Of a stretch of 64,000 bases of DNA, positions 1 through 59,783 are shown piece by piece. The position numbers were made by a program, and so were the translations under genes. The notes beneath the pieces were generated by a model. It was not told where the DNA came from, did no database searches, and was given only the letters and a program-made list of their open reading frames with translations. Within the stretch, counting starts at the first letter, position 1, and every line of letters starts with the position of its first letter. The stretch is from positions 186,001 to 250,000 of the IMG/VR virus record IMGVR_UViG_3300028829_003504; one strand, written 5' to 3'.

Positions 1-255
1 GAAGAGGCTCAGACTCTAGACTTTGAACGTGATATAACCTCAGGCAACCCCACTGTTATCTTACCTGCCCGTATAGGCGTATTAAATGTAGGAGATGTCA
101 TTATTATACCCGATAGAAACTACTCGTTGAAAATTACGGATGCTCCGCGTAAGCAATTAGCTGACCGAGTAATAATTGAATGGGCTGTTAATACTAGGAC
201 ATTGCAAACCAATGAGGCGTTACGGAATATCCATAAGGGATATAAGCTAAAGTAA
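1..255 (+). CDS. 3' end of a gene entering the window (hypothetical, possibly virion protein)
   Basis: Frame 1 open from base 1 to TAA at 253-255 (EEAQTLDFERD...HKGYKLK*). Confidence 0.75.
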   Translation, partial: EEAQTLDFERDITSGNPTVILPARIGVLNVGDVIIIPDRNYSLKITDAPRKQLADRVIIEWAVNTRTLQTNEALRNIHKGYKLK

Positions 256-573
256 ATCTAGATAATAAGAAATGATCTACAATAAACTGGTCATTTTTTG
301 GACGGTCAGGTTAAATAATTTTAGTTTGAAAAACCCCCACGCTTAGATTGAGCATATACGTACGCCTGTGTAGCATATAGGGCAGTATAGGTCGACTAAA
401 ACTAAATGGTTAATGTAATCAACCACTTACGATTTATTTTACACTAAAATTCAGGAAAAAGCCAACCCGGAATTGGCAGATATAGCATTCTACGTGGTTT
501 AGGGTATAGCAGAGTACTTCTACCGTACGCCGGGGTCTAGATCGAGGTTTCTAAAAAGTTGGTTTAGGGCATT

Positions 574-580
574 CTGTAAA
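574..580 (+). promoter_or_regulatory. CTGTAAA motif, putative phage promoter element upstream of the candidate ncRNA
   Basis: Same heptamer recurs 38-111 bp upstream of many gene starts in the window. Confidence 0.45.
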
Positions 581-589
581 GTGAGTGCA

Positions 590-960
590 ACGAGTATGAT
601 GTTCTAAGCCATCAGAAACAAAAGACCACAAGGGTCCAAAGAGAGAAAAAAGAAAGCACGATCAGAACGTCGAGCGGGGAACCCGCTTGACGACAAACGC
701 GATTAACAAAGAAACAATGCAAAACCCCGCAGACGATTACAACGATGCAAAGACCCTTGAGAAAACGGCGAGAAGGACCATTGCGCCCTTAAAAGGACCT
801 TCGGTTTTACCTATTAAAAGGAGATCTAAGTACCTTGGTTCTCAATAGACTAATGGATCGTTTTCGGTAATAGGTTTATTGTTTATTGGGAGGTTTAGTT
901 AAGAAAGAGATCGACCAAAGGTCTCCTCTTCCAACGGAGGTACCCTCCGACTATTATCTT
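590..960 (+). ncRNA. Candidate large structured non-coding RNA (boundaries approximate)
   Basis: No ORF >=60 aa. Hairpin 668-692 (11 bp, one G-U). Nested pairings 712-718/878-884, 722-726/873-877, 736-740/867-871, 741-746/857-862, 757-763/839-845. Hairpins 913-923 and 935-949. Confidence 0.5.
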
Positions 961-961
961 T

Positions 962-968
962 CTGTAAA
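962..968 (+). promoter_or_regulatory. CTGTAAA motif followed by GTATAAT, putative promoter of ORF 1009
   Basis: Recurring motif 47 bp upstream of the ATG. Confidence 0.5.
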
Positions 969-1008
969 GTATAATCATTAATATGATAATGATAATAGAG
1001 ATCTCCTT

Positions 1009-2115
1009 ATGGCTATTTCCCGCGAGCCCCGCGCTGCCTTCCCAAAACTCACACTGCAAGCAACACGCTCCCAGATTAAAGTACTACGCAGTATGATAAA
1101 GCGTGCCTCTGAAATATACGTATGGACTATTGAGAAACACCAGTCTAACTACTTCACTGATGATAGCCAGCTACCTATTTACATCGACAGACTCTACGCT
1201 AATGATCCACTTGAATGGTTTCCCAGAGAACTTTTCTTAAACATCTTACGTCGAGGTAGAATGCACTACTTATCCTCGCCTGATGCAAAAGCCCAAGTCC
1301 CCAGAGGCTGGAGCTTACCTTTCCAATTCAAAGACTTCAAAGTACGGTCATTAGGTATAGACTTTACCTTACTGGAAGAAGTTCCCCACCTTGAGAAAAC
1401 CTTTATACCCTCAACTAATACAAACAAACAATTAAAGTTAAGCGAAGCCATGACCACTGGTTGGTGTCTTTTAAAGTACACTAAATTTAATGACCAGCTC
1501 CGTATTACACACGAACGATTCCGTAATATGGGCATGCGCTCCGACGTAGTTGCAGAAGATACTATGTGTTACGGATCTATCTCAATAAGCACCAAGGAGC
1601 TAAAGCTACTGGAGGACACAGCTAAGATAATAGGACCTGTCCGTAAGATTATTATTAATAGTATGTTCGACCACCACGAAGCAACTGGTAAATACCCAAC
1701 ATGGAATACTATTAAGAAAGAGTTACCCTTGATTAAGCACCAACTAGACTCGTCCCAGTTAGAGTTGTACTCTGCGGCCATCAGTGCCTCTTTCTATCAT
1801 ACGGCTATGCAGGCCTTACATAAATTTCATACTGAGGGCGATGCTAAGTTCTGGTACAGCGCCTTGGATAGAGTTAGCTTGTTAGTCGAGACCCCTGCCA
1901 AATACCTAGAGCGCGGTTCTATACACATACCTAAATTTGCACGTAGACCCTACATGACCTATAAGCGCCAGCTCTACTTAAACATAGAGGAAACTGTAAA
2001 GATACCCCATGTTATCTGCTTGTATCTAAGTAGATCTAATAATGATATAGATCGCCACCGTATTAGGTTTGGTGTATATCCAACTGACCCAAATAGGTTT
2101 AATAATGTCATATAG
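1009..2115 (+). CDS. Tandem TnpB/Cas12f-like N-terminal (HTH_OrfB/WED-REC) domain protein lacking RuvC
   Basis: Half 1 KLTLQATRSQIKVL...ASEIYVW...Y and half 2 LLEDT...HEATGK...KELPLIK...GSIHIPKF match the spacing of the IS605 OrfB N-terminus. No zinc finger or RuvC II/III motifs. Confidence 0.5.
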   Translation: MAISREPRAAFPKLTLQATRSQIKVLRSMIKRASEIYVWTIEKHQSNYFTDDSQLPIYIDRLYANDPLEWFPRELFLNILRRGRMHYLSSPDAKAQVPRGWSLPFQFKDFKVRSLGIDFTLLEEVPHLEKTFIPSTNTNKQLKLSEAMTTGWCLLKYTKFNDQLRITHERFRNMGMRSDVVAEDTMCYGSISISTKELKLLEDTAKIIGPVRKIIINSMFDHHEATGKYPTWNTIKKELPLIKHQLDSSQLELYSAAISASFYHTAMQALHKFHTEGDAKFWYSALDRVSLLVETPAKYLERGSIHIPKFARRPYMTYKRQLYLNIEETVKIPHVICLYLSRSNNDIDRHRIRFGVYPTDPNRFNNVI

Positions 2116-8375: not shown

Positions 8376-8523
8376 CTTACATTTAAGTTTTATAATTTGA
8401 TACTAATAGTCCAGACAACGGAGTGTCTGAATTTGAAGCTGTGGCTTATTGCTACAAAGTCTGATTATGGCAATGCTTCATATTGAACCGTTTTAGCTTT
8501 TGTGGGTTCAATTAAACAAATAC

Positions 8524-8545
8524 GGTAGGGACCTAGGTCCCTACC
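8524..8545. repeat. Perfect 22-bp palindrome GGTAGGGACCTAGGTCCCTACC
   Basis: Read directly from the sequence. Confidence 0.9.
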
Positions 8546-8549
8546 CATC

Positions 8550-8581
8550 AACCACTTACTTATTAGTATAGTGGTTTTTTT
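8550..8581 (+). terminator. Rho-independent terminator
   Basis: AACCACT...AGTGGTT stem followed by T tract. Confidence 0.6.
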
Positions 8582-8602
8582 AGGTCTCCAGCTCGACTCA
8601 AA

Positions 8603-8609
8603 CTGTAAA
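8603..8609 (+). promoter_or_regulatory. CTGTAAA motif upstream of clamp loader
   Basis: AAACTGTAAATATAAG, 44 bp before the ATG and just after a terminator. Confidence 0.55.
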
Positions 8610-8646
8610 TATAAGATACGTTAGACTATATCTGAGTGACAAATAC

Positions 8647-46327: not shown

Positions 46328-49300
46328 ATGATGGCAGATGAACAGTTAAAGAGTTTCATTTCGAACTACTTGTATTTATCAGATCTACGTAATGTAGACA
46401 AGACTAATCCACTAACTTTCGAACTTGAACCAGATCACAGAACATTTTTGATGGTAAGTTCTTATGACGAACCTACTTTTTCGCAATTACCTTACAACGT
46501 ATTATGGCTTGTGTGTGACCCAGAAGACCCTTGGTATAATACAGTATATCGTCGTACTAATCATACTAACGCTGATGGTAGAAAGAGTACGTGGGAAGAA
46601 ATCACTACCTTTGATATGCTTTACGTAGTAGACCAATACTATCAAGCAATTAGTGATGCTGACCCATTTGAATTAGGTATTGAAGGTGAGTTCTCTTTAG
46701 GGCCTGCCTCAACTCTGAAAGCAGGTCTTATATTGATACCTGAAGTCCAAGGCGGCGACCCTGTTGTTGTTACTTTTGACTACCCTGGATTTTTAGGCGC
46801 CCGCACACCTAAAGAGCATACACATCCTGATAAGCCACGGACTATGGTACACATCGACGGAGAATACTCTATCGATGAAAACTATCCTGACTCTGTAGGC
46901 GATACAGACACCTTCGTTTCATTTGATTACTCTCAGCTTCCAGAAGAAGGTTCCGTGTTCTTCTTAACTGGGAATAACCCTGATCGTACGAACGAATGGT
47001 TCGGTGAGTGGCGTCTTCCCACAGAAGATGATGTAACGTACTTCATTCCTACTCTCATAGCTGTTGATGCGAGGCTAGCCTCAGGTGCAGTTGAGCTGGG
47101 TGATAACGCTACAGGTCAAGTAGAGGCCGACGGCGTATTCGATGATAACACTAGGGATATCAATCCTTCTGACATTGTTTGGACAATTGAAAATAACGCA
47201 GAAGGTATTACTATTGATCAGAGCGGTGTAATTACTATTCCTGACATAAGTTCTGATACTACTATAACCGTTAACGCTAAACTTGAGGATAAGTACCATC
47301 CTGGGACTTTCGTTAATGGACTCTTAGTTATCAATGTTAAAGACCTATTTACCCCAGTGGTTCCACAATCACTTGCAATCATAGGTAACGAGACGCAACC
47401 TGAGCAAACTACAGGCAGCTACGTGTTCCGTGTGACGTACTCCGATGGAGCAACTTCGGATATAACACCAGATACCGCTAGTAGCTCAGCACCTATTGCC
47501 ACATTTGGTATTAACGGTGACTTAACTGCAATGGACATTACTAATGACACCCCTACAGTTTTAAGTGCGTCATCAGCTATCGAAGGTATTATACTTAGTG
47601 CCTCATTACCTGTTACCATACTGGCGGAAGTAATTCCAGTTAGTTTGACCATCACAGGTCTTGCTACTGTACAGGAAGAAGGCACTTACACCTACGATTT
47701 CGTCGTTTCTTACTCTGATGGAACTACTCAGGATATATCTATGGTAGACGGCGCTACTTCTAGTGACGTTACATCAGGTATATTTAATACGGATGGTGAA
47801 TTAACTACTTTAGACATAGTTAATGATACGTCTATTGTCCTAGAAGCCTCATTTGCAGTTGACGGTATTCTACTTGATGCTTCACTAACTGTTAATATTG
47901 TTGCCGACTCAATTCCTTCGAGCATAGAGATTATAGGAGCCAGTAGCATTGACGAAGGTGAAACCGAATCTTATACATTCCAAGTTACTTATTCGGATAG
48001 CACAACTCGAATGTTAGATTTAGAGGACCTGGACTCATTCATTTCGGACAGTGTTGATTTGGTAGTCGCAGGTTCAGTTGCCTCAGTAGGTGATATTAAT
48101 GCAAATGGTTCAGCCATACTGACTGTTAGTTATACGGAGTTAGGCCATACTATTACAGATACTCACAACGTTACTTTGGTAGCAGACCCCGTCCCTCAGT
48201 CATTAGTTATACTAGGAGCCAGTAGTATTAGAGAAGGTGAAACCGAATCTTATACGTACCAAGTTACTATGACAGATGGAAGTACCAAAATGGTTACTGT
48301 ATCTGATTTAGCCTCTGATAATGCGGACTTGACAGTAGTAGGCGATGATGCCACAGTAGGTTCAATACTAGCTGATGGTGCCGCTGAACTATCCGCATCT
48401 TACACGGAAGATGGCATTACGGTTAACGCTACGCACCCTGTAGGTTTAATTGCTGCCTCAGCCCCTCAGTCATTAGCCATACTAGGAGCCAGTAGTATTG
48501 ACGAAGGTGAGACCGAATCTTATACATTCCAAGTTACCTATTCAGATGGAACTACGTCATTGGTTACAGTCTCGGACTTCGCCTCTGATAATGTAGACTT
48601 AGTTATTACGGATTCTGACGCCACTGTAGGTTCAATACTGGTTAACGGTTCAGCTGGCCTAACTGCTTCTTATACGGAAGACGGTGTTACAGTCAGTGCA
48701 TCCTTACCTGTGGATTTAGTAGCTGCGCCTGCACCTCAATCTCTGGAGATTCTAGGTTCTTCGACATCGATTGAGTCTGGTGTAGAGCTATATACGTTTA
48801 AGTTAACTTATTCAGATGGAACTACGTCTTTAGTTGATGTAACGGACTTCGCCTCTGATAATGTGGACGTTTCTATATCAGGTAATAATACGGCGACTGT
48901 GGGTTCTATTACTTCTGACGGATCGGCTATTCTATCTGCTTCTTACACGGAAGACGGTGTCACTGTTAGCGACACTCATGAATTGACCTACGTGGCTAAT
49001 GCGGCTCCTACGTCCCTTAAGATCATAGGTGCAGACACTATACAGGAAGGTGACCAAGAAACGTTTACGTTTGAAGTTACATACTCTGATGGTTCTACTT
49101 CATTAGTCTCAGTGGCTGACTTTTCTTCTGATGGAGCTGCAGGCGTAGTCTCAGATAACAGTGTGGTTACTGGTGGTGATATTGACGCAGATACTTCGGT
49201 GGTACTCTCTGCTTCTTATGAGGAGGATGGGGTCTCTGTTACGGACACACACAACCTTAATATTGAAGCATTACCTGTACCTACAAGTATGGAGATATTG

Positions 49301-50782
49301 GGCACAGACTCTATAAATGAGAATGACTCCAGTACGTATACTTTCCAAGTTACAATGAGTGACTCAACTACTAAAATGGTTACGGTTACTGATTTTGCTT
49401 CGGACGATGTATCTAAAGCTACGGTATTAAATAACACTACTGTTAATACAATGGACATTTCATCTGACACCACAGTATCCGTATCCGCTTCGTATGAAGA
49501 AGAAGGAACCACTGTTAGTGCTAGTAAGACAATTAACATTGTTGCTGATGTAGTACCTACCTCGATTGAAATTACAGGTCCTATTAGTGTGGATGAGGAG
49601 TCTATAACTTCTTATACGTTCCAAGTTACAATGAGTGACTCAACTACCAAAACGGTTACGGCCAGTACGGCAAGTGCCGACACAGGTGCCTTCTCAACGG
49701 CAGGTAGTTTTACTGCACCTACTGTTACCGGTCCTAGTAGTGTTGTCCTTTCCGCTTCTTACACGGAAGGCGATGTTACTGTAGATGACACACATGTAGT
49801 TAGTATAGGAAACACACTGAACCCATTAATCAGTATTTCGTTATCAGGTCTAGCTCAGTTGGATGAAGGAGGTAACACTACACCTCTGACTGTAACGGCA
49901 ACATTTGAAGACTCCACTACGTCTGTCGTAACAGGTTCTTCTGACTACGTGATTTTATCTGGAGGTACTTACGGATCTATATCAGATAACATTGTTACCT
50001 CAGGTAACGTGACAGAAAACTCGAACATGGTGTTAGAAGCAACTTATACTATAGGTGGGGTTACTAAGACGGCCGAACACACTATATCAATTAGAGCTGT
50101 AGCGCCTATTCCTGTTAGCGTTGAGATATCAGGGCCTTCTGAGGTAGATGAAGGTCAGACTGGTAGTTTAATTGCTGTGGTAACTTACGATGATAACTCT
50201 ACTGCGGCAGTAACTACTTCGGGTACCTGGTCATTTGCAGGTCCATCCGAAGGAGCTAGCGTGGATTCCAGCGGTATATTTTCTGCTCCTGCTGACGTAG
50301 GAAATGATACATCGGTTACTGTTAGTTTTACGTACACTGAGAACGGCACCACACTAGATGATAGTCACTCTATACTAGTTAAAGATATTCCAGTTAGTGG
50401 ACTTTCTGCTGCTTGGGGTTATGACGAGTCAGGTGCTGATATTTGGCCATACACGCAAGCGTTTATAGAAGCTCTACCTAATAAGTTAGCTTCGCCTGTT
50501 ATAGGTCAGACGTTGACGTTTGGTACTAGTGGACACACCTACTTGGCTATACCTGAATCGGAATTATCCCCAGGTAAAGCCTTGTGGTACTATTGGAACG
50601 GAGGAACAAATCCTAGTATTTTGGGTGGAGCTACGTGGCCTCTTGTTGGGTTCTTGGGCTCCAATAAACCTGCTATCATTAGCATTGCTGGCGAGAACTG
50701 GCATATCTATCGTTCTGACTTCGCGGGCGTACTTGGACCTGATACTTACGCCTTTTTTGAAGACAATATGCCATCATTCTAA
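46328..50782 (+). CDS. Ig-like repeat tail fibre/adhesin (about 11-12 repeats of ~90 aa)
   Basis: Repeats P.SL.I.G...I.EG....Y.F.VTYSDG; DNA-level repeats at ~270-bp spacing. Confidence 0.85.
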   Translation: MMADEQLKSFISNYLYLSDLRNVDKTNPLTFELEPDHRTFLMVSSYDEPTFSQLPYNVLWLVCDPEDPWYNTVYRRTNHTNADGRKSTWEEITTFDMLYVVDQYYQAISDADPFELGIEGEFSLGPASTLKAGLILIPEVQGGDPVVVTFDYPGFLGARTPKEHTHPDKPRTMVHIDGEYSIDENYPDSVGDTDTFVSFDYSQLPEEGSVFFLTGNNPDRTNEWFGEWRLPTEDDVTYFIPTLIAVDARLASGAVELGDNATGQVEADGVFDDNTRDINPSDIVWTIENNAEGITIDQSGVITIPDISSDTTITVNAKLEDKYHPGTFVNGLLVINVKDLFTPVVPQSLAIIGNETQPEQTTGSYVFRVTYSDGATSDITPDTASSSAPIATFGINGDLTAMDITNDTPTVLSASSAIEGIILSASLPVTILAEVIPVSLTITGLATVQEEGTYTYDFVVSYSDGTTQDISMVDGATSSDVTSGIFNTDGELTTLDIVNDTSIVLEASFAVDGILLDASLTVNIVADSIPSSIEIIGASSIDEGETESYTFQVTYSDSTTRMLDLEDLDSFISDSVDLVVAGSVASVGDINANGSAILTVSYTELGHTITDTHNVTLVADPVPQSLVILGASSIREGETESYTYQVTMTDGSTKMVTVSDLASDNADLTVVGDDATVGSILADGAAELSASYTEDGITVNATHPVGLIAASAPQSLAILGASSIDEGETESYTFQVTYSDGTTSLVTVSDFASDNVDLVITDSDATVGSILVNGSAGLTASYTEDGVTVSASLPVDLVAAPAPQSLEILGSSTSIESGVELYTFKLTYSDGTTSLVDVTDFASDNVDVSISGNNTATVGSITSDGSAILSASYTEDGVTVSDTHELTYVANAAPTSLKIIGADTIQEGDQETFTFEVTYSDGSTSLVSVADFSSDGAAGVVSDNSVVTGGDIDADTSVVLSASYEEDGVSVTDTHNLNIEALPVPTSMEILGTDSINENDSSTYTFQVTMSDSTTKMVTVTDFASDDVSKATVLNNTTVNTMDISSDTTVSVSASYEEEGTTVSASKTINIVADVVPTSIEITGPISVDEESITSYTFQVTMSDSTTKTVTASTASADTGAFSTAGSFTAPTVTGPSSVVLSASYTEGDVTVDDTHVVSIGNTLNPLISISLSGLAQLDEGGNTTPLTVTATFEDSTTSVVTGSSDYVILSGGTYGSISDNIVTSGNVTENSNMVLEATYTIGGVTKTAEHTISIRAVAPIPVSVEISGPSEVDEGQTGSLIAVVTYDDNSTAAVTTSGTWSFAGPSEGASVDSSGIFSAPADVGNDTSVTVSFTYTENGTTLDDSHSILVKDIPVSGLSAAWGYDESGADIWPYTQAFIEALPNKLASPVIGQTLTFGTSGHTYLAIPESELSPGKALWYYWNGGTNPSILGGATWPLVGFLGSNKPAIISIAGENWHIYRSDFAGVLGPDTYAFFEDNMPSF

Positions 50783-57965: not shown

Positions 57966-59783
57966 ATGTTAAGCGAATCCGCTAAGTTTGAAAACTTAGA
58001 CCAATTCAAATGGTACACCTATACAGGTCGTAATAAGAATCTGGTAGCAAGAAAGCATGAGAGACTATTAGTGAAAGGTGCCGTATACGGCATGAAAGCC
58101 ATTAGGGGTGATAAATTCTATATAGTCTTTCCTGAAGACTACCACATTGACTTTACGGTTACTAAGCGTGTAGGCCTTAATATATCTAAAAACTCTAAAC
58201 TTAAGCGTAAGCCACCTCCACTGACTAATAACAAGGGAGAGGGAGGTCGTGCTTCTCGCACACTAGGGCCTAAAGGCCTTGGTAGAGTCCAAAAGGCCCA
58301 AGAGAAGTCTAAGTGGGATGCTACTTACTTCAAGCCGCAAGCTCGGGTAGGGGATGAATTGAAGAACGGTATAAGTTTCGAGAATTACCAATGGCGTAAT
58401 TTTACGGACATAACTCCCATTAGGAAGCGTAATGGTACCAAGGTTGTTCACTCATTCCCAAAGAAGTCTATTGTAGGTGTCCGCTTCTTACGTGATAGTA
58501 AAGGAGCTAAACTAGTTACTACTGATGGTAAAGTACTTACTATAAGTAAAGAGCAGTTTGATATGGTACTTAACGCATCGAAAGTAATGCCTAAGAATAA
58601 ATGGCCTGAAGGGACCATCTCTGTTGAAGAAATGGCTGAGAACCTTCAGTACGAAAAAGAATCGGACAAGGCCCGACGCATTTCTGATAGAAACCTAGCC
58701 AGAGCCGATAACGAAGCAGCTAGGCGTGAAAAGAAGAATCAGGAGCGTAAGAAGAGACGGGAGGATCAAGAAGCCATTAGGTCCGAACGCGAGAGATTGA
58801 AGCGAAGACTTGAGGGCCGTAAGAAAGAAGTCAATCTTACTATGAAACCTAAGACCAGTAAAGAGCTTGCGGATATATTAGTGCAGGGTAAAAAGCCTAA
58901 AGAGGACGAGGGCGTATTATCTGATATGGATCTGCAAGAGAATCTAGACGCCCTTAAGCAGATGGACTTGGATTCAGATGATACTCAGGACTACGATGAC
59001 GAAGAGTCTGGAGGGGAAGGTGGTACTTCTAATGACTTCGATGATAGTGACCTGTCGGACGCAGATATGCCTGACCCTGAAAACCGTGACTTCGATGATA
59101 ACGAATCCGATAAACTTATGGACGACCTTGACGAATTAATCGAGCAGCGACACGAGCAGGCATTTAGTTTAGGTGACCTTGACGGCGAAGACGAAGAGGA
59201 AGACCTTGACGAAGAGGAAGACCTTGACGAAGAGGAAGACCCGGACGAAGAGGAAGACCCGGACGACCTTGACGAAGAGGAAGACCCGGACGACCTTGAC
59301 GAAGAGGAAGACCCGGACGACCTTGACGAAGAGGAAGACCTTGACGAAGAGGAAGACCCGGACGACCTTGACGAAGAGGAAGACCCGGACGAAGAGGAAG
59401 ACCCGGACGTCGCTATTGCTGAGGAGGAGCTAGGAGAAGAAGGAGAAGAGGAAGACCTGGACGAAGAAGGTGACTCTAATCCTAAAGACTATGTATCAGA
59501 AGAAGGTGACGTGGTTTTATTCCTAAGTGATGATAGCGATAAACGTGAGTACGTACTACTTGACATATTCCCACTACCTGCAAACAATAACATCACTGTG
59601 TATAAGGTGTACGATGTAACCAACAAGCCTGACGTGTTCAATACTGTCCGTGTAGCAAAAGGCTCTCGTAATAAGTTTGAGAATATGGTTAAGTTCCTGC
59701 GCAAAATGAATCCAAAAGAATATAGTGGCTACTATACCTCAGCCGAACTTATGGATAGGTCTAAGAGTCCTATTAACAGCTAA
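57966..59783 (+). CDS. Protein with basic N-terminal half and long Asp/Glu repeat region
   Basis: DLDEEE/DPDEEE/DPD repeats. Confidence 0.75.
   Translation: MLSESAKFENLDQFKWYTYTGRNKNLVARKHERLLVKGAVYGMKAIRGDKFYIVFPEDYHIDFTVTKRVGLNISKNSKLKRKPPPLTNNKGEGGRASRTLGPKGLGRVQKAQEKSKWDATYFKPQARVGDELKNGISFENYQWRNFTDITPIRKRNGTKVVHSFPKKSIVGVRFLRDSKGAKLVTTDGKVLTISKEQFDMVLNASKVMPKNKWPEGTISVEEMAENLQYEKESDKARRISDRNLARADNEAARREKKNQERKKRREDQEAIRSERERLKRRLEGRKKEVNLTMKPKTSKELADILVQGKKPKEDEGVLSDMDLQENLDALKQMDLDSDDTQDYDDEESGGEGGTSNDFDDSDLSDADMPDPENRDFDDNESDKLMDDLDELIEQRHEQAFSLGDLDGEDEEEDLDEEEDLDEEEDPDEEEDPDDLDEEEDPDDLDEEEDPDDLDEEEDLDEEEDPDDLDEEEDPDEEEDPDVAIAEEELGEEGEEEDLDEEGDSNPKDYVSEEGDVVLFLSDDSDKREYVLLDIFPLPANNNITVYKVYDVTNKPDVFNTVRVAKGSRNKFENMVKFLRKMNPKEYSGYYTSAELMDRSKSPINS
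59175..59408 (+). repeat. Mosaic tandem repeat of 18-bp and 9-bp units
   Basis: GACCTTGACGAAGAGGAA, GACCCGGACGAAGAGGAA and GACCCGGAC units. Confidence 0.95.

What the first reader, a model, noticed from the sequence alone, without database searches (positions are those of the whole stretch)
590..960. Long nested rod fold in the largest ORF-free region
Seen: 601-780 is very T-poor (17 T in 180 nt) and 841-900 is T/G-rich. The two pair in strictly nested order: 712-718/878-884, 722-726/873-877, 736-740/867-871, 741-746/857-862, 757-763/839-845, capped by small hairpins within 767-836. An 11-bp hairpin with a G-U pair (668-692) and hairpins at 913-923 and 935-949 flank the rod. CTGTAAA copies at 574 and 962 bracket the unit, suggesting its own transcript. 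Inference: a ~370-nt ncRNA. Alternatives to a guide/scaffold role are a 6S-like RNA polymerase decoy (the irregular rod is ~200 nt) or a single-stranded replication origin.
Basis: partly seen in the sequence, partly recalled or inferred. Interest (0 to 1): 0.7.

Follow-up and report, generated by a model that had tools for sequence, protein, structure and literature searches.

The report
Phage noncoding RNA beside TnpB-like protein
The largest gene-free gap of this 262-kb marine jumbo phage holds a conserved, probably transcribed noncoding RNA (not the long rod first proposed) that sits directly upstream of a rare protein built from two copies of the RNA-binding lobes of TnpB/Cas12f RNA-guided nucleases, so it may be that protein's partner RNA.

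Summary
The stated base complementarities, the T-poor stretch and both CTGTAAA copies are present. The + strand folds better than shuffles (z -3.06) and the - strand does not. The long nested rod is not conserved. In three homologous phage contigs its pairs survive at chance level, and the window's own minimum-energy long-range helices also fail.

These features are conserved:
- a promoter-like block around 574;
- a T-poor 180 nt;
- a hairpin at 668-692 with compensatory and G-U changes;
- a closing helix 629-636/752-759;
- a 30-nt block at 903-932, 29 positions invariant, that forms a hairpin.

There is no conserved ORF and no Rfam match.

CTGTAAA proved to be a genome-wide promoter-like motif: 31 of 66 copies lie in the 6.8% intergenic DNA, consensus aAAACTGTAAAtA. 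The unit therefore probably starts near 590 as its own transcript or long leader.

The gene just downstream (1009-2115, 368 aa) models confidently as two tandem WED-REC modules of TnpB/Cas12f (Z 12-13) with no RuvC nuclease.

My best reading is a new noncoding RNA or leader that serves this nuclease-less TnpB-derived protein. Transcription and binding are not shown. A 6S-like decoy is not supported.

The parts
271..299 (+). Terminator-like hairpin plus T6 run that ends the upstream 406-aa gene
   Evidence: Read from the sequence. The T-run and a different but still pairing stem are kept in L003 and L010.
395..450 (.). Upstream DNA block B0: ACTAAA repeats and AATCAACCACTTA at 417-429, which fits the IHF consensus WATCAANNNNTTR. 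Probably a protein-binding DNA site, outside the RNA.
   Evidence: Conserved even in distant relatives (NCTB, L023, L024). It occurs in the opposite orientation in L021, L023 and Y3. In L013 it is replaced by three 25-nt tandem repeats that carry a related motif.
559..593 (+). Conserved block B1 with the promoter-like CTGTAAA at 574-580 (P_A). The inferred transcription start lies near 588-595.
   Evidence: Conserved in 5 homologs. CTGTAAA is enriched in intergenic DNA (31 of 66 copies, binomial P 4e-19). One copy ends 23 nt before a tRNA-Lys.
590..960 (+). Candidate noncoding RNA or long leader; Rfam has no family that matches it
   Evidence: + strand z -3.06 against - strand z -0.96. No conserved ORF, and a 1-nt indel in L010 breaks the only shared frame. 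No Rfam hit.
601..780 (+). T-poor, A/C-rich segment, including the polypurine run 639-657
   Evidence: 17 T in 180 nt. The same T-poverty is kept in L003, L010 and L011, at 2-7 T per 50 nt.
629..759 (+). Domain I: closing helix 629-636/752-759 around hairpin 668-692
   Evidence: In L010 two G-C pairs become U-A and C-G. L003 forms the helix with G-U pairs in a register shifted by one. On the 3-sequence model alignment 86.9% of cells pair, with 5 double-sided changes against 2.1 in shuffles (8 of 500).
668..692 (+). Hairpin HP1 (11 bp, one G-U)
   Evidence: G678-C682 becomes U-A in L003. U670-A690 becomes C-G in L011. The G-U at 672/688 becomes G-C in L010 and A-U in L011. The top of the stem is replaced by a different pairing sequence in L010.
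841..890 (+). Hairpin 841-850/881-890, whose 3' strand is a conserved block
   Evidence: Paired 10/10 in the window, 9/10 in L003 and 7/10 in L011, with one-sided changes only.
902..932 (+). Hairpin HP2, containing the 30-nt block 903-932 that is invariant at 29 positions in four phages
   Evidence: alignment; pairing probability 0.6-0.85 in all four. No covariation is possible because nothing varies. The flanking proteins are only 46-81% identical.
935..949 (+). Hairpin HP3 followed by a U-rich tail: a weak terminator-like site
   Evidence: C935-G949 becomes A-U in L003. The hairpin is absent in L010 and L011.
962..975 (+). Second promoter-like site P_B: CTGTAAA directly followed by TATAAT, 34 nt before the ATG
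   Evidence: Kept in L003 and L010, absent in L011 and L013.
1009..2115 (+). 368-aa protein: two tandem WED-REC modules of the TnpB/Cas12f fold, with no RuvC or zinc-ribbon (TNB) part
   Evidence: AF2 model with pLDDT 82. Residues 182-358 match ISDra2 TnpB residues 2-173 at Z 13.0, and residues 8-170 match AsCas12f at Z 12.1. In an unbiased scan of 48,161 PDB chains the top 27 hits are all TnpB/Fanzor/Cas12.

Best explanation
Window 590-960 is the body of a + strand noncoding RNA, or long 5' leader. It is probably launched from a phage-specific single-element promoter (CTGTAAA at 574). That promoter is likely read by host RNA polymerase carrying the phage's own sigma-like factor.

The RNA is not a long rod. 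It is a T-poor, largely open 5' half organised by one closing helix and one strong hairpin. This is followed by a 3' half with two or three hairpins, one of them almost invariant in sequence.

Its most likely role is as the cognate RNA of the protein encoded immediately downstream. That protein consists only of two copies of the guide-RNA/heteroduplex-binding WED-REC lobes of TnpB/Cas12f and has no nuclease domain. I infer that the protein binds the conserved hairpins of this RNA, in cis on its own leader or after processing. The complex would then act as a nuclease-free RNA-protein regulator at the head of the replication-gene cluster.

Shown here: conservation, strand-specific pairing, the promoter motif and the protein fold.

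Inferred: transcription, binding, and any guide function.
For: Promoter:
- 31 of 66 CTGTAAA copies lie in the 6.8% intergenic DNA (P 4e-19). 24 lie within 150 nt upstream of a same-strand start, and one ends 23 nt before tRNA-Lys.
- The motif is also intergenic in all relatives.
- The genome has a homolog (42% identity, E 4e-87) of the PaBG gp118 sigma factor (PMC7412058).

RNA:
- Strand-specific folding.
- No conserved ORF.
- HP1 shows compensatory and G-U changes.
- Domain I has 5 double-sided changes against 2.1 in shuffles.
- A 30-nt block with 29 invariant positions forms HP2, although the neighbouring proteins are only 46-81% identical.

Protein:
- pLDDT 82.
- Z 13.0 and 12.1 to TnpB and Cas12f WED-REC for the two halves.
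- The top 27 hits of an unbiased PDB scan are all in this superfamily.
- AFDB and ESM-atlas neighbours carry PF12323, PF01385 and PF07282.

Linkage:
- Every contig that holds a homolog of the protein (L003, L010, L011, L013+L030, L031) has a long ORF-free stretch directly upstream of it. L011, L013 and L031 have a clean CTGTAAA-type site 250-450 nt upstream. L003 and L010 carry only variant forms there (GTGTAAA, ATGTAAA).

Precedent: nuclease-dead TnpB/Cas12f relatives with dedicated guide RNAs act as transcription factors, some of them in phages (PMC10705468, PMC13472631).
Against: - No transcript evidence: no RNA run was listed.
- Only 4-5 homologous sequences exist, so covariation support is thin. 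The tested structure was derived from the same sequences.
- Covariance models of both halves find nothing in the more distant relatives, including L011 and L013 for domain I.
- L013 lacks the whole 3' half with the invariant hairpin.
- No guide-like match of the RNA to the phage genome beyond chance.
- Known TnpB guide RNAs lie downstream of the gene and are 130-250 nt long; this RNA is upstream and longer.
- The protein lacks the RuvC domain that all described relatives retain, and the similarity is in fold only.
- Both CTGTAAA copies in the gap have TT instead of the consensus AA upstream.
- Relatives without the protein (NCTB, PaBG, Y3) also have a large gap at this position.
Confidence: 0.4

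Rival explanations
1. An ordinary long 5' untranslated leader of the first gene of the replication-module gene array. It would have a few cis-acting hairpins for stability, processing or translational control, and no dedicated RNA-protein partnership with the TnpB-like protein.
For: In L011, L013, L031 and NCTB the only CTGTAAA-type site lies 250-450 nt upstream of the next gene, so a long leader looks like the ancestral state. There is no canonical GC-stem plus T-run terminator at the 3' end, unlike other terminators of this genome. HP3 is not conserved.
Against: 29 of 30 positions are invariant over 903-932, and HP1 is nearly invariant among the three closest sequences. That is stronger constraint than the flanking proteins show, which suggests a specific ligand. 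A second promoter-like site at 962 in three phages makes the leader dispensable for expressing the gene.
Confidence: 0.3
2. Part of the phage's lytic replication origin. The upstream protein-binding sites would control a promoter whose purine-rich, T-poor transcript forms a persistent R-loop or primer, as at ColE1 RNA II or T4 oriF/oriG, next to an AT-rich unwinding region at 970-1000.
For: - The locus is unique in the genome and lies between the primase/resolvase genes and the replication-gene array.
- An IHF-like site is conserved in either orientation across the clade, and L013 has three tandem repeats at that place.
- GATC is enriched: 7, 7, 6 and 4 sites in the four gaps, against 0.7-1.5 expected from each locus's own density. 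This is one of the two densest 750-nt windows of the genome.
- A polypurine run at 639-657 is conserved as a feature.
Against: Most of these features lie upstream of 560, outside the finding. No DnaA-box or iteron set is conserved. The upstream 406-aa protein gave no initiator-like fold. Conserved hairpins with G-U pairs point to RNA structure rather than mere hybrid formation. Cumulative GC skew only follows gene direction.
Confidence: 0.12
3. DNA-level element only. The conserved blocks would be binding sites for phage or host proteins, and the apparent RNA structure would be incidental.
For: B0 is clearly a DNA motif, because it works in both orientations. B0 and B1 are single-copy in the genome. 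GATC is enriched.
Against: Pairing is kept through G-U intermediates that would be C-A mismatches on the other strand. The strong strand asymmetry of composition is conserved. A promoter-like motif points into the region.
Confidence: 0.1
4. A 6S-like RNA polymerase decoy formed by the ~200-nt irregular rod.
For: The phage relies on host RNA polymerase with its own sigma-like factor (PMC7412058), so a decoy for the host holoenzyme would make biological sense. The rod helices do exist in this one sequence.
Against: The rod helices are kept only at chance level in homologs. RNAalifold and the pairing-probability projection recover local hairpins only. There is no 6S match in Rfam even at E<=10.
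Confidence: 0.03

Closest known systems
TnpB omega/reRNA, IscB omega RNA and Cas12f single-guide RNAs (OMEGA / type V-F systems)
   Same: A structured noncoding RNA of a few hundred nt is encoded next to, and on the same strand as, a protein with the TnpB/Cas12f WED-REC fold. The upstream position resembles IscB, whose omega RNA lies 5' of the gene (my own knowledge). The tandem modules recall the asymmetric Cas12f dimer on one ~200-nt RNA (PMC12255294).
   Different: The protein has no RuvC or zinc-ribbon domain at all. Instead it has two WED-REC modules in one chain. TnpB guide RNAs lie at or after the 3' end of the gene. There is no Rfam match, no identifiable guide or target, and no transposon ends.
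TldR and dCas12f-sigmaE: nuclease-dead TnpB/Cas12f relatives used as RNA-guided transcription factors (PMC10705468, PMC13472631, PMC13418256)
   Same: These are domesticated, non-cutting members of the same superfamily. Some are phage-encoded, each works with a dedicated guide RNA, and they act on transcription. Here the locus sits among phage-specific promoters, and the phage encodes its own sigma-like factor.
   Different: Those proteins keep an inactivated or truncated RuvC and are recognisable by sequence. This one is detectable only by fold and lacks the domain entirely. Their guide RNAs have a 3' guide with a known target; no target was found here.
6S RNA
   Same: Similar size class. A phage that uses host RNA polymerase would be a natural user.
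   Different: No conserved rod with a central bubble and no covariance-model match.
ColE1 RNA II and T4 oriF/oriG origin transcripts
   Same: A promoter is followed by a purine-rich, partly structured transcript beside replication genes, with an AT-rich region downstream.
   Different: No evidence of hybrid formation, RNase H processing or origin activity, and no sequence similarity.

Membership tests
6S RNA (Rfam RF00013 and relatives) | Match to the family covariance model | tested here: not met
   No Rfam hit at gathering score in the window. No 6S hit at E<=10 in 230-1030.
6S RNA (Rfam RF00013 and relatives) | Conserved long irregular rod with a central bubble | tested here: not met
   Rod pairs are kept 14/30, 9/30 and 9/30 in the homologs. 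The consensus folds contain only local hairpins.
6S RNA (Rfam RF00013 and relatives) | Binds the sigma-70 holoenzyme | not testable with these tools
   Needs biochemistry.
TnpB/IscB/Cas12f guide RNA (omega RNA / sgRNA) | Encoded next to a TnpB-superfamily protein | tested here: met
   The adjacent 368-aa protein consists of two WED-REC modules, Z 13.0 and 12.1. The adjacency holds in all 6 lineages that carry the protein.
TnpB/IscB/Cas12f guide RNA (omega RNA / sgRNA) | Partner protein has a RuvC domain (active or inactivated) with a zinc-ribbon insertion | tested here: not met
   All 368 residues are accounted for by the two WED-REC modules, 8-170 and 182-358.
TnpB/IscB/Cas12f guide RNA (omega RNA / sgRNA) | Match to a known omega RNA family, as far as Rfam curates any | tested here: not met
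   No hits.
TnpB/IscB/Cas12f guide RNA (omega RNA / sgRNA) | A terminal guide segment complementary to a DNA target beside a TAM | tested here: inconclusive
   Only chance-level matches to the phage's own genome. The host genome is unknown. The segment ~595-628 is variable among homologs.
TnpB/IscB/Cas12f guide RNA (omega RNA / sgRNA) | The RNA is bound by the protein | not tested
   No complex prediction was run, because the tool gives no verdict for RNA. Needs RIP-seq or EMSA.
Independent small or noncoding RNA gene | Own promoter | tested here: met
   The CTGTAAA motif at 574 belongs to a genome-wide, intergenic-enriched class. It deviates from the consensus in the upstream AAA.
Independent small or noncoding RNA gene | Own terminator | tested here: inconclusive
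   A weak terminator-like hairpin at 935-949 plus a U-rich tail is present in the window and L003 only.
Independent small or noncoding RNA gene | A discrete transcript is observed | not testable with these tools
   No RNA run was listed. Only DNA contigs hold the sequence.
Replication origin | Iterons or initiator sites, an AT-rich unwinding element, methylation-site cluster | tested here: inconclusive
   An IHF-like site is conserved. Tandem repeats occur only in L013. GATC is enriched. An AT-rich stretch lies at 970-1000. No conserved iteron set or DnaA box was found.

The most novel reading that the evidence does not exclude
A jumbo-phage lineage has reduced a TnpB/Cas12f ancestor to a single-chain 'pseudo-dimer' of two RNA-binding WED-REC lobes without any nuclease domain. 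It would use the ~370-nt RNA encoded just upstream as scaffold and guide to open or mark specific DNA, for example an R-loop at its own origin or promoters at the head of the replication module. That would be an RNA-guided, cleavage-free DNA-recognition system of a new architecture.
Probability: 0.2. Interest if true: 0.9.

Novelty: new variant of a known kind. Interest (0 to 1): 0.68.

Why it matters
If the RNA and the tandem WED-REC protein form a complex, this would be the most reduced natural derivative of the TnpB/Cas12 lineage yet seen: an RNA-binding core with no nuclease, fused as a pseudo-dimer, in a virus. It would extend the recent findings that these nucleases are repeatedly domesticated as RNA-guided regulators. 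It would also offer a very compact scaffold for programmable DNA or RNA binding.

Two results stand whatever the RNA does. The work defines a previously undescribed single-element promoter motif (aAAACTGTAAAtA) for the PaBG-like jumbo phages. It also defines a new conserved noncoding RNA or leader that Rfam does not cover.

Tried and rejected
- **Rfam.** No family matched the window at gathering score, the gap at E<=10, eleven related loci, or five other gaps of the genome, apart from one tRNA.
- **DNA searches for more homologs.**
  - INPHARED gave no DNA hit and no hit to the 368-aa protein.
  - Exact-pattern scans of IMG/VR and JGI metagenomes returned only the same phage or chance hits (L004, L015-L019).
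- **Reads.**
  - No RNA runs were listed.
  - Logan contigs simply span the region, so they show neither a physical end nor a coverage step.
- **Coding.**
  - The only shared frame is the translation of the invariant block.
  - It lacks a conserved start and is broken by a 1-nt indel in L010.
- **Upstream 406-aa protein as a possible initiator.** The AF2 model is poor (pLDDT 53) and the fold hits are uninformative.
- **Covariance models.** Models of the 3' domain (R1) and of domain I (R2) found no further members in distant relatives.
- **Sigma-70 consensus promoters.** None on the + strand of the gap.
- **Sigma domains by Pfam in the genome.** No hit. The sigma-like gene was found only through the PaBG protein.
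- **Antisense or guide-like matches** of the gap to the rest of the genome were at chance level.
- **Sequence-level link of the 368-aa protein to TnpB.** None in Pfam or in a PDB profile search.
- **Genes after the gap in distant relatives.** The gene in NCTB and the 364-aa gene in L023 are not homologous to the 368-aa protein by hhalign.
- **Complex prediction** was not run, because the tool gives no verdict for protein-RNA pairs.

Full report
**Context**

The window is bases 186001-250000 of a 261,788-bp IMG/VR phage genome from a marine metagenome. The finding lies in a 753-nt ORF-free gap at window 256-1008. This is the largest gap in the window and the second largest in the genome.

The gap sits between two + strand genes. 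Upstream is a 406-aa gene of unknown function (phrog_21298). Downstream is a 368-aa gene that heads a ~75-kb array of + strand genes, including DNA polymerase A, helicases and nucleotide-metabolism genes.

By the 406-aa protein, the phage is a distant relative (about 34% identity) of the PaBG / Erwinia Y3 / NCTB group of jumbo phages. That group is reported to use host RNA polymerase with phage sigma-like factors (PMC7412058).

**The observation**

601-780 has 17 T, and both CTGTAAA copies are there. Such T-poverty occurs in 0.24% of the 180-nt windows of the window.

Folding of 590-960 gives these values:
- + strand: -98.5 kcal/mol, z -3.06, 0 of 100 shuffles as good.
- - strand: z -0.96.

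It pairs 604-627 with 873-898.

**Relatives**

DNA and pattern searches found only identical copies or chance hits. Protein-anchored look-ups gave syntenic loci:

| Locus | Source | Gap coverage |
|---|---|---|
| L003 | ENA, 311-kb contig | full |
| L010 | Logan | full |
| L011 | Logan | full |
| L013 + L030 | JGI, one phage split inside the gap | partial |
| L031 | NCBI | distant relative |
| L021, L023, L024 | Logan | distant relatives |

The cultured relatives also have an unannotated gap at this position: 712 nt in NCTB, 1477 nt in PaBG and 388 nt in Y3.

**What is conserved**

The four close gaps align with a patchwork of near-invariant blocks. Within 560-1008 these are:
- B1 (559-593, around the first CTGTAAA).
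- A polypurine block near 629-650.
- 655-703, which contains hairpin 668-692.
- 728-739.
- A GGAC/GTCC block near 775-800.
- 878-893.
- A 30-nt block at 903-932 with 29 invariant positions.
- GGTACCCTCC (939-948).
- The second CTGTAAA.

The neighbouring proteins are only 46-81% identical, so several blocks are under stronger constraint than the genes around them.

There is no conserved ORF. The only frame shared by all four is the translation of the invariant block. It has no conserved start and is broken by a 1-nt deletion in L010.

**Structure**

RNAalifold and a projection of each sequence's pairing probabilities onto the alignment agree that only two hairpins are common to all four sequences: HP1 (668-692) and HP2 (902-932).

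HP1 shows these changes:
- G678-C682 becomes U-A in L003.
- U670-A690 becomes C-G in L011.
- The G-U at 672/688 becomes G-C in L010 and A-U in L011.
- In L010 the upper stem is replaced by an unrelated sequence that still pairs.

HP2 cannot covary because nothing in it varies.

A closing helix 629-636/752-759 around HP1 is kept in L010 through two double changes (G-C to U-A, G-C to C-G). L003 keeps it through G-U pairs in a register shifted by one. On the model-fitted three-sequence alignment of this domain:
- 86.9% of cells pair.
- 5 pairs show double-sided changes, against 2.1 in shuffles (8 of 500).
- Slid controls show 2 or fewer.

This is suggestive only, because there are just three sequences and the structure was derived from them. 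A further hairpin, 841-850/881-890, is kept with one-sided changes.

That is chance level. z-scores across homologs are uneven.

So the rod is not a conserved feature. The G-U pairs, the conserved T-poverty and the strand-specific folding all point to the + strand.

**Promoters**

CTGTAAA proved to be the most informative detail of the finding.
- The genome has 66 copies on both strands. 31 lie in the 6.8% of DNA that is intergenic (binomial P 4e-19).
- 24 lie within 150 nt upstream of a same-strand start, often just after a canonical terminator.
- The consensus is aAAACTGTAAAtA, with no -35-like element.
- From my own knowledge, this differs by one base from the T4 late promoter core TATAAATA.
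- One copy ends 23 nt before the 5' end of the phage's tRNA-Lys, which places the start close behind the motif.
- The motif is intergenic in every relative examined, including NCTB, Y3, PaBG and the metagenomic contigs.
- The genome encodes a homolog of the PaBG gp118 sigma factor (42% identity, E 4e-87).
- I found no paper that describes this motif.

The copies at 574 and 962 are therefore two promoter-like sites. Both are off-consensus in the upstream AAA.

The second, fused to a perfect TATAAT, would serve the 368-aa gene. It is absent in L011 and L013, and in L031 and NCTB the only such site lies about 280-370 nt upstream of the next gene. A long leader therefore looks ancestral. The 3' end is uncertain, because the weak terminator-like hairpin 935-949 is present only in the window and L003.

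**The neighbour**

The 368-aa protein has no Pfam, PHROG or PDB-sequence match. It has only three related clusters among 1.84 billion representatives.

Its AlphaFold model is confident (pLDDT 82, pTM 0.62). The structural comparisons all point the same way:
- Foldseek returns only TnpB, Cas12f, Cas12k, Fanzor and related chains from the PDB.
- AlphaFold DB gives IS605 OrfB / 'transposase HTH' clusters, matched by two separate query ranges.
- VIA-align gives Z 13.0 for residues 182-358 against ISDra2 TnpB residues 2-173, with 159 of 166 residues aligned. That chain has only the WED and REC domains resolved.
- VIA-align gives Z 12.1 for residues 8-170 against AsCas12f.
- In a scan of 48,161 PDB representatives that does not rely on Foldseek, the top 27 hits are all from this superfamily. 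Scores then drop to 5.8 or less.
- ESM-atlas neighbours carry PF12323, PF01385 and PF07282.

The protein is therefore two tandem copies of the guide-RNA/heteroduplex-binding lobes of TnpB/Cas12f, with no room for a RuvC or zinc-ribbon domain.

Described domesticated relatives (TldR, dCas12f-sigmaE, Cas12k) keep a crippled RuvC and work with a dedicated guide RNA. Some are phage-encoded transcription factors (PMC10705468, PMC13472631, PMC13418256). Cas12f itself acts as a dimer on one ~200-nt RNA (PMC12255294), which a fused tandem could imitate.

**Interpretation**

The most economical reading that uses all of this has three parts:
- P_A launches a + strand noncoding RNA or leader of about 370-430 nt.
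- Its conserved hairpins, above all the invariant 903-932, are protein-recognition elements.
- The protein that recognises them is the TnpB-derived product of the very next gene.

Every contig that carries the protein also has a long ORF-free stretch in front of it.

The link is inferred from adjacency and fold, not shown, and several points count against it:
- L013 lacks the 3' half.
- No guide or target could be identified.
- The RNA is upstream and larger than typical TnpB guide RNAs.
- Relatives without the protein also have a gap at this position.

I give this reading 0.4. A plain regulatory leader gets 0.3.

**DNA-level features**

The upstream half of the gap (256-560, outside the finding) looks like a DNA-level control region.
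- A block with ACTAAA repeats and an IHF-consensus site (417-429) is conserved across the whole clade. It occurs in either orientation.
- In L013 it is replaced by three 25-nt tandem repeats abutting B1.
- GATC is enriched four- to six-fold in all four close gaps.

The gap also lies next to the primase and resolvase genes and holds a polypurine run and an AT-rich stretch at 970-1000. Together these features keep an origin or primer-RNA reading alive (0.12), but nothing specific supports it.

**What it is not**

It is not a member of any Rfam family. It is not 6S-like, it contains no tRNA, and it is not a repeat or a genome end.

**Verdict**

- The ncRNA inference is partly supported.
- The rod and the 6S idea are rejected.
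- The 'guide/scaffold' idea is raised by the discovery of the TnpB-like neighbour.

Novelty: a new variant of a known kind (a domesticated TnpB/Cas12f system), if the link holds. If it does not hold, this is a new phage leader RNA together with a new promoter motif.

Noticed in passing
Whole genome. In the window, e.g. 8603, 30292, 42117 and 59803 (+ strand): A genome-wide promoter-like motif aAAACTGTAAAtA. 31 of 66 CTGTAAA copies are intergenic, and most lie 20-90 nt upstream of starts and just after terminators. The motif is shared by NCTB, Y3, PaBG and the metagenomic relatives. It resembles the T4 late promoter core. I found no description of it in the searchable literature.
   Followed up: partly
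window 395-450, and window 8547-8559: The motif AATCAA-N4-TTA (IHF consensus) with ACTAAA repeats is conserved across the clade, in either orientation. An identical 13-mer, ATCAACCACTTAC, recurs in the 271-nt gap at 8376-8646, where its last seven bases form the 5' arm of the second of two terminator hairpins.
   Followed up: partly
window 256-1008; L003:5260-6000; L010:6400-7164; L011:3696-4435: GATC is 4-6 times denser in the gap than in the rest of each locus (7, 7, 4 and 6 sites). Genome-wide, GATC is under-represented: 1.87 per kb against about 3.6 expected from composition.
   Followed up: partly
L013:8311-8397 and L013:8659-8699 / L030:1-57: A related phage has three 25-nt tandem repeats directly upstream of the B1 block. 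It also has a 27-nt tandem repeat that includes the start codon of the TnpB-like gene, and this repeat split the assembly into two contigs. Several other assemblies also break inside this gap (L012, L020, L021, L022).
   Followed up: partly
genome 163296-164775, 41614-42573 and 50778-51135 (outside the window; loci L025, L026): Other CTGTAAA sites are followed by long ORF-free stretches on the - strand (1480, 960 and 358 nt). The first holds the only tRNA (Lys, UUU), plus more than 1 kb with no Rfam match. These may be further noncoding RNAs.
   Followed up: partly
L010:7165-7268: In L010 the sequence homologous to the first ~10 codons of the TnpB-like gene is conserved at the nucleotide level, but it runs into a stop. 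The called gene restarts 104 nt later in another frame. This may be a leader peptide, a sequencing error, or nucleotide-level constraint on the start region.
   Followed up: no
genome 167510-168526 (- strand; L033): A homolog (42% identity) of the PaBG gp118 sigma-70-like factor. The Pfam sigma domains do not detect it.
   Followed up: partly
window 46328-50782: A 1484-aa protein with a HORMA-domain match above the Pfam cut-off (PF02301, 28.8 bits, E 1e-6) and a weak Rib-domain match.
   Followed up: no
window ~59226-59405, inside ORF 57966-59783: This is the most T-poor 180 nt of the window (10 T). It lies inside a 605-aa ORF, and the surrounding 2 kb has AT skew 0.22 and GC skew 0.15. It is probably a purine-rich coding repeat.
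   Followed up: no
genome 185035-186255 (window 1-255 is its 3' end): The upstream 406-aa protein is conserved across the PaBG-like clade, with invariant CxC (64, 66) and CxxC (186, 189) motifs and a beta-rich C-terminal half. Its function is unknown, and its neighbours are the primase and resolvase genes.
   Followed up: partly
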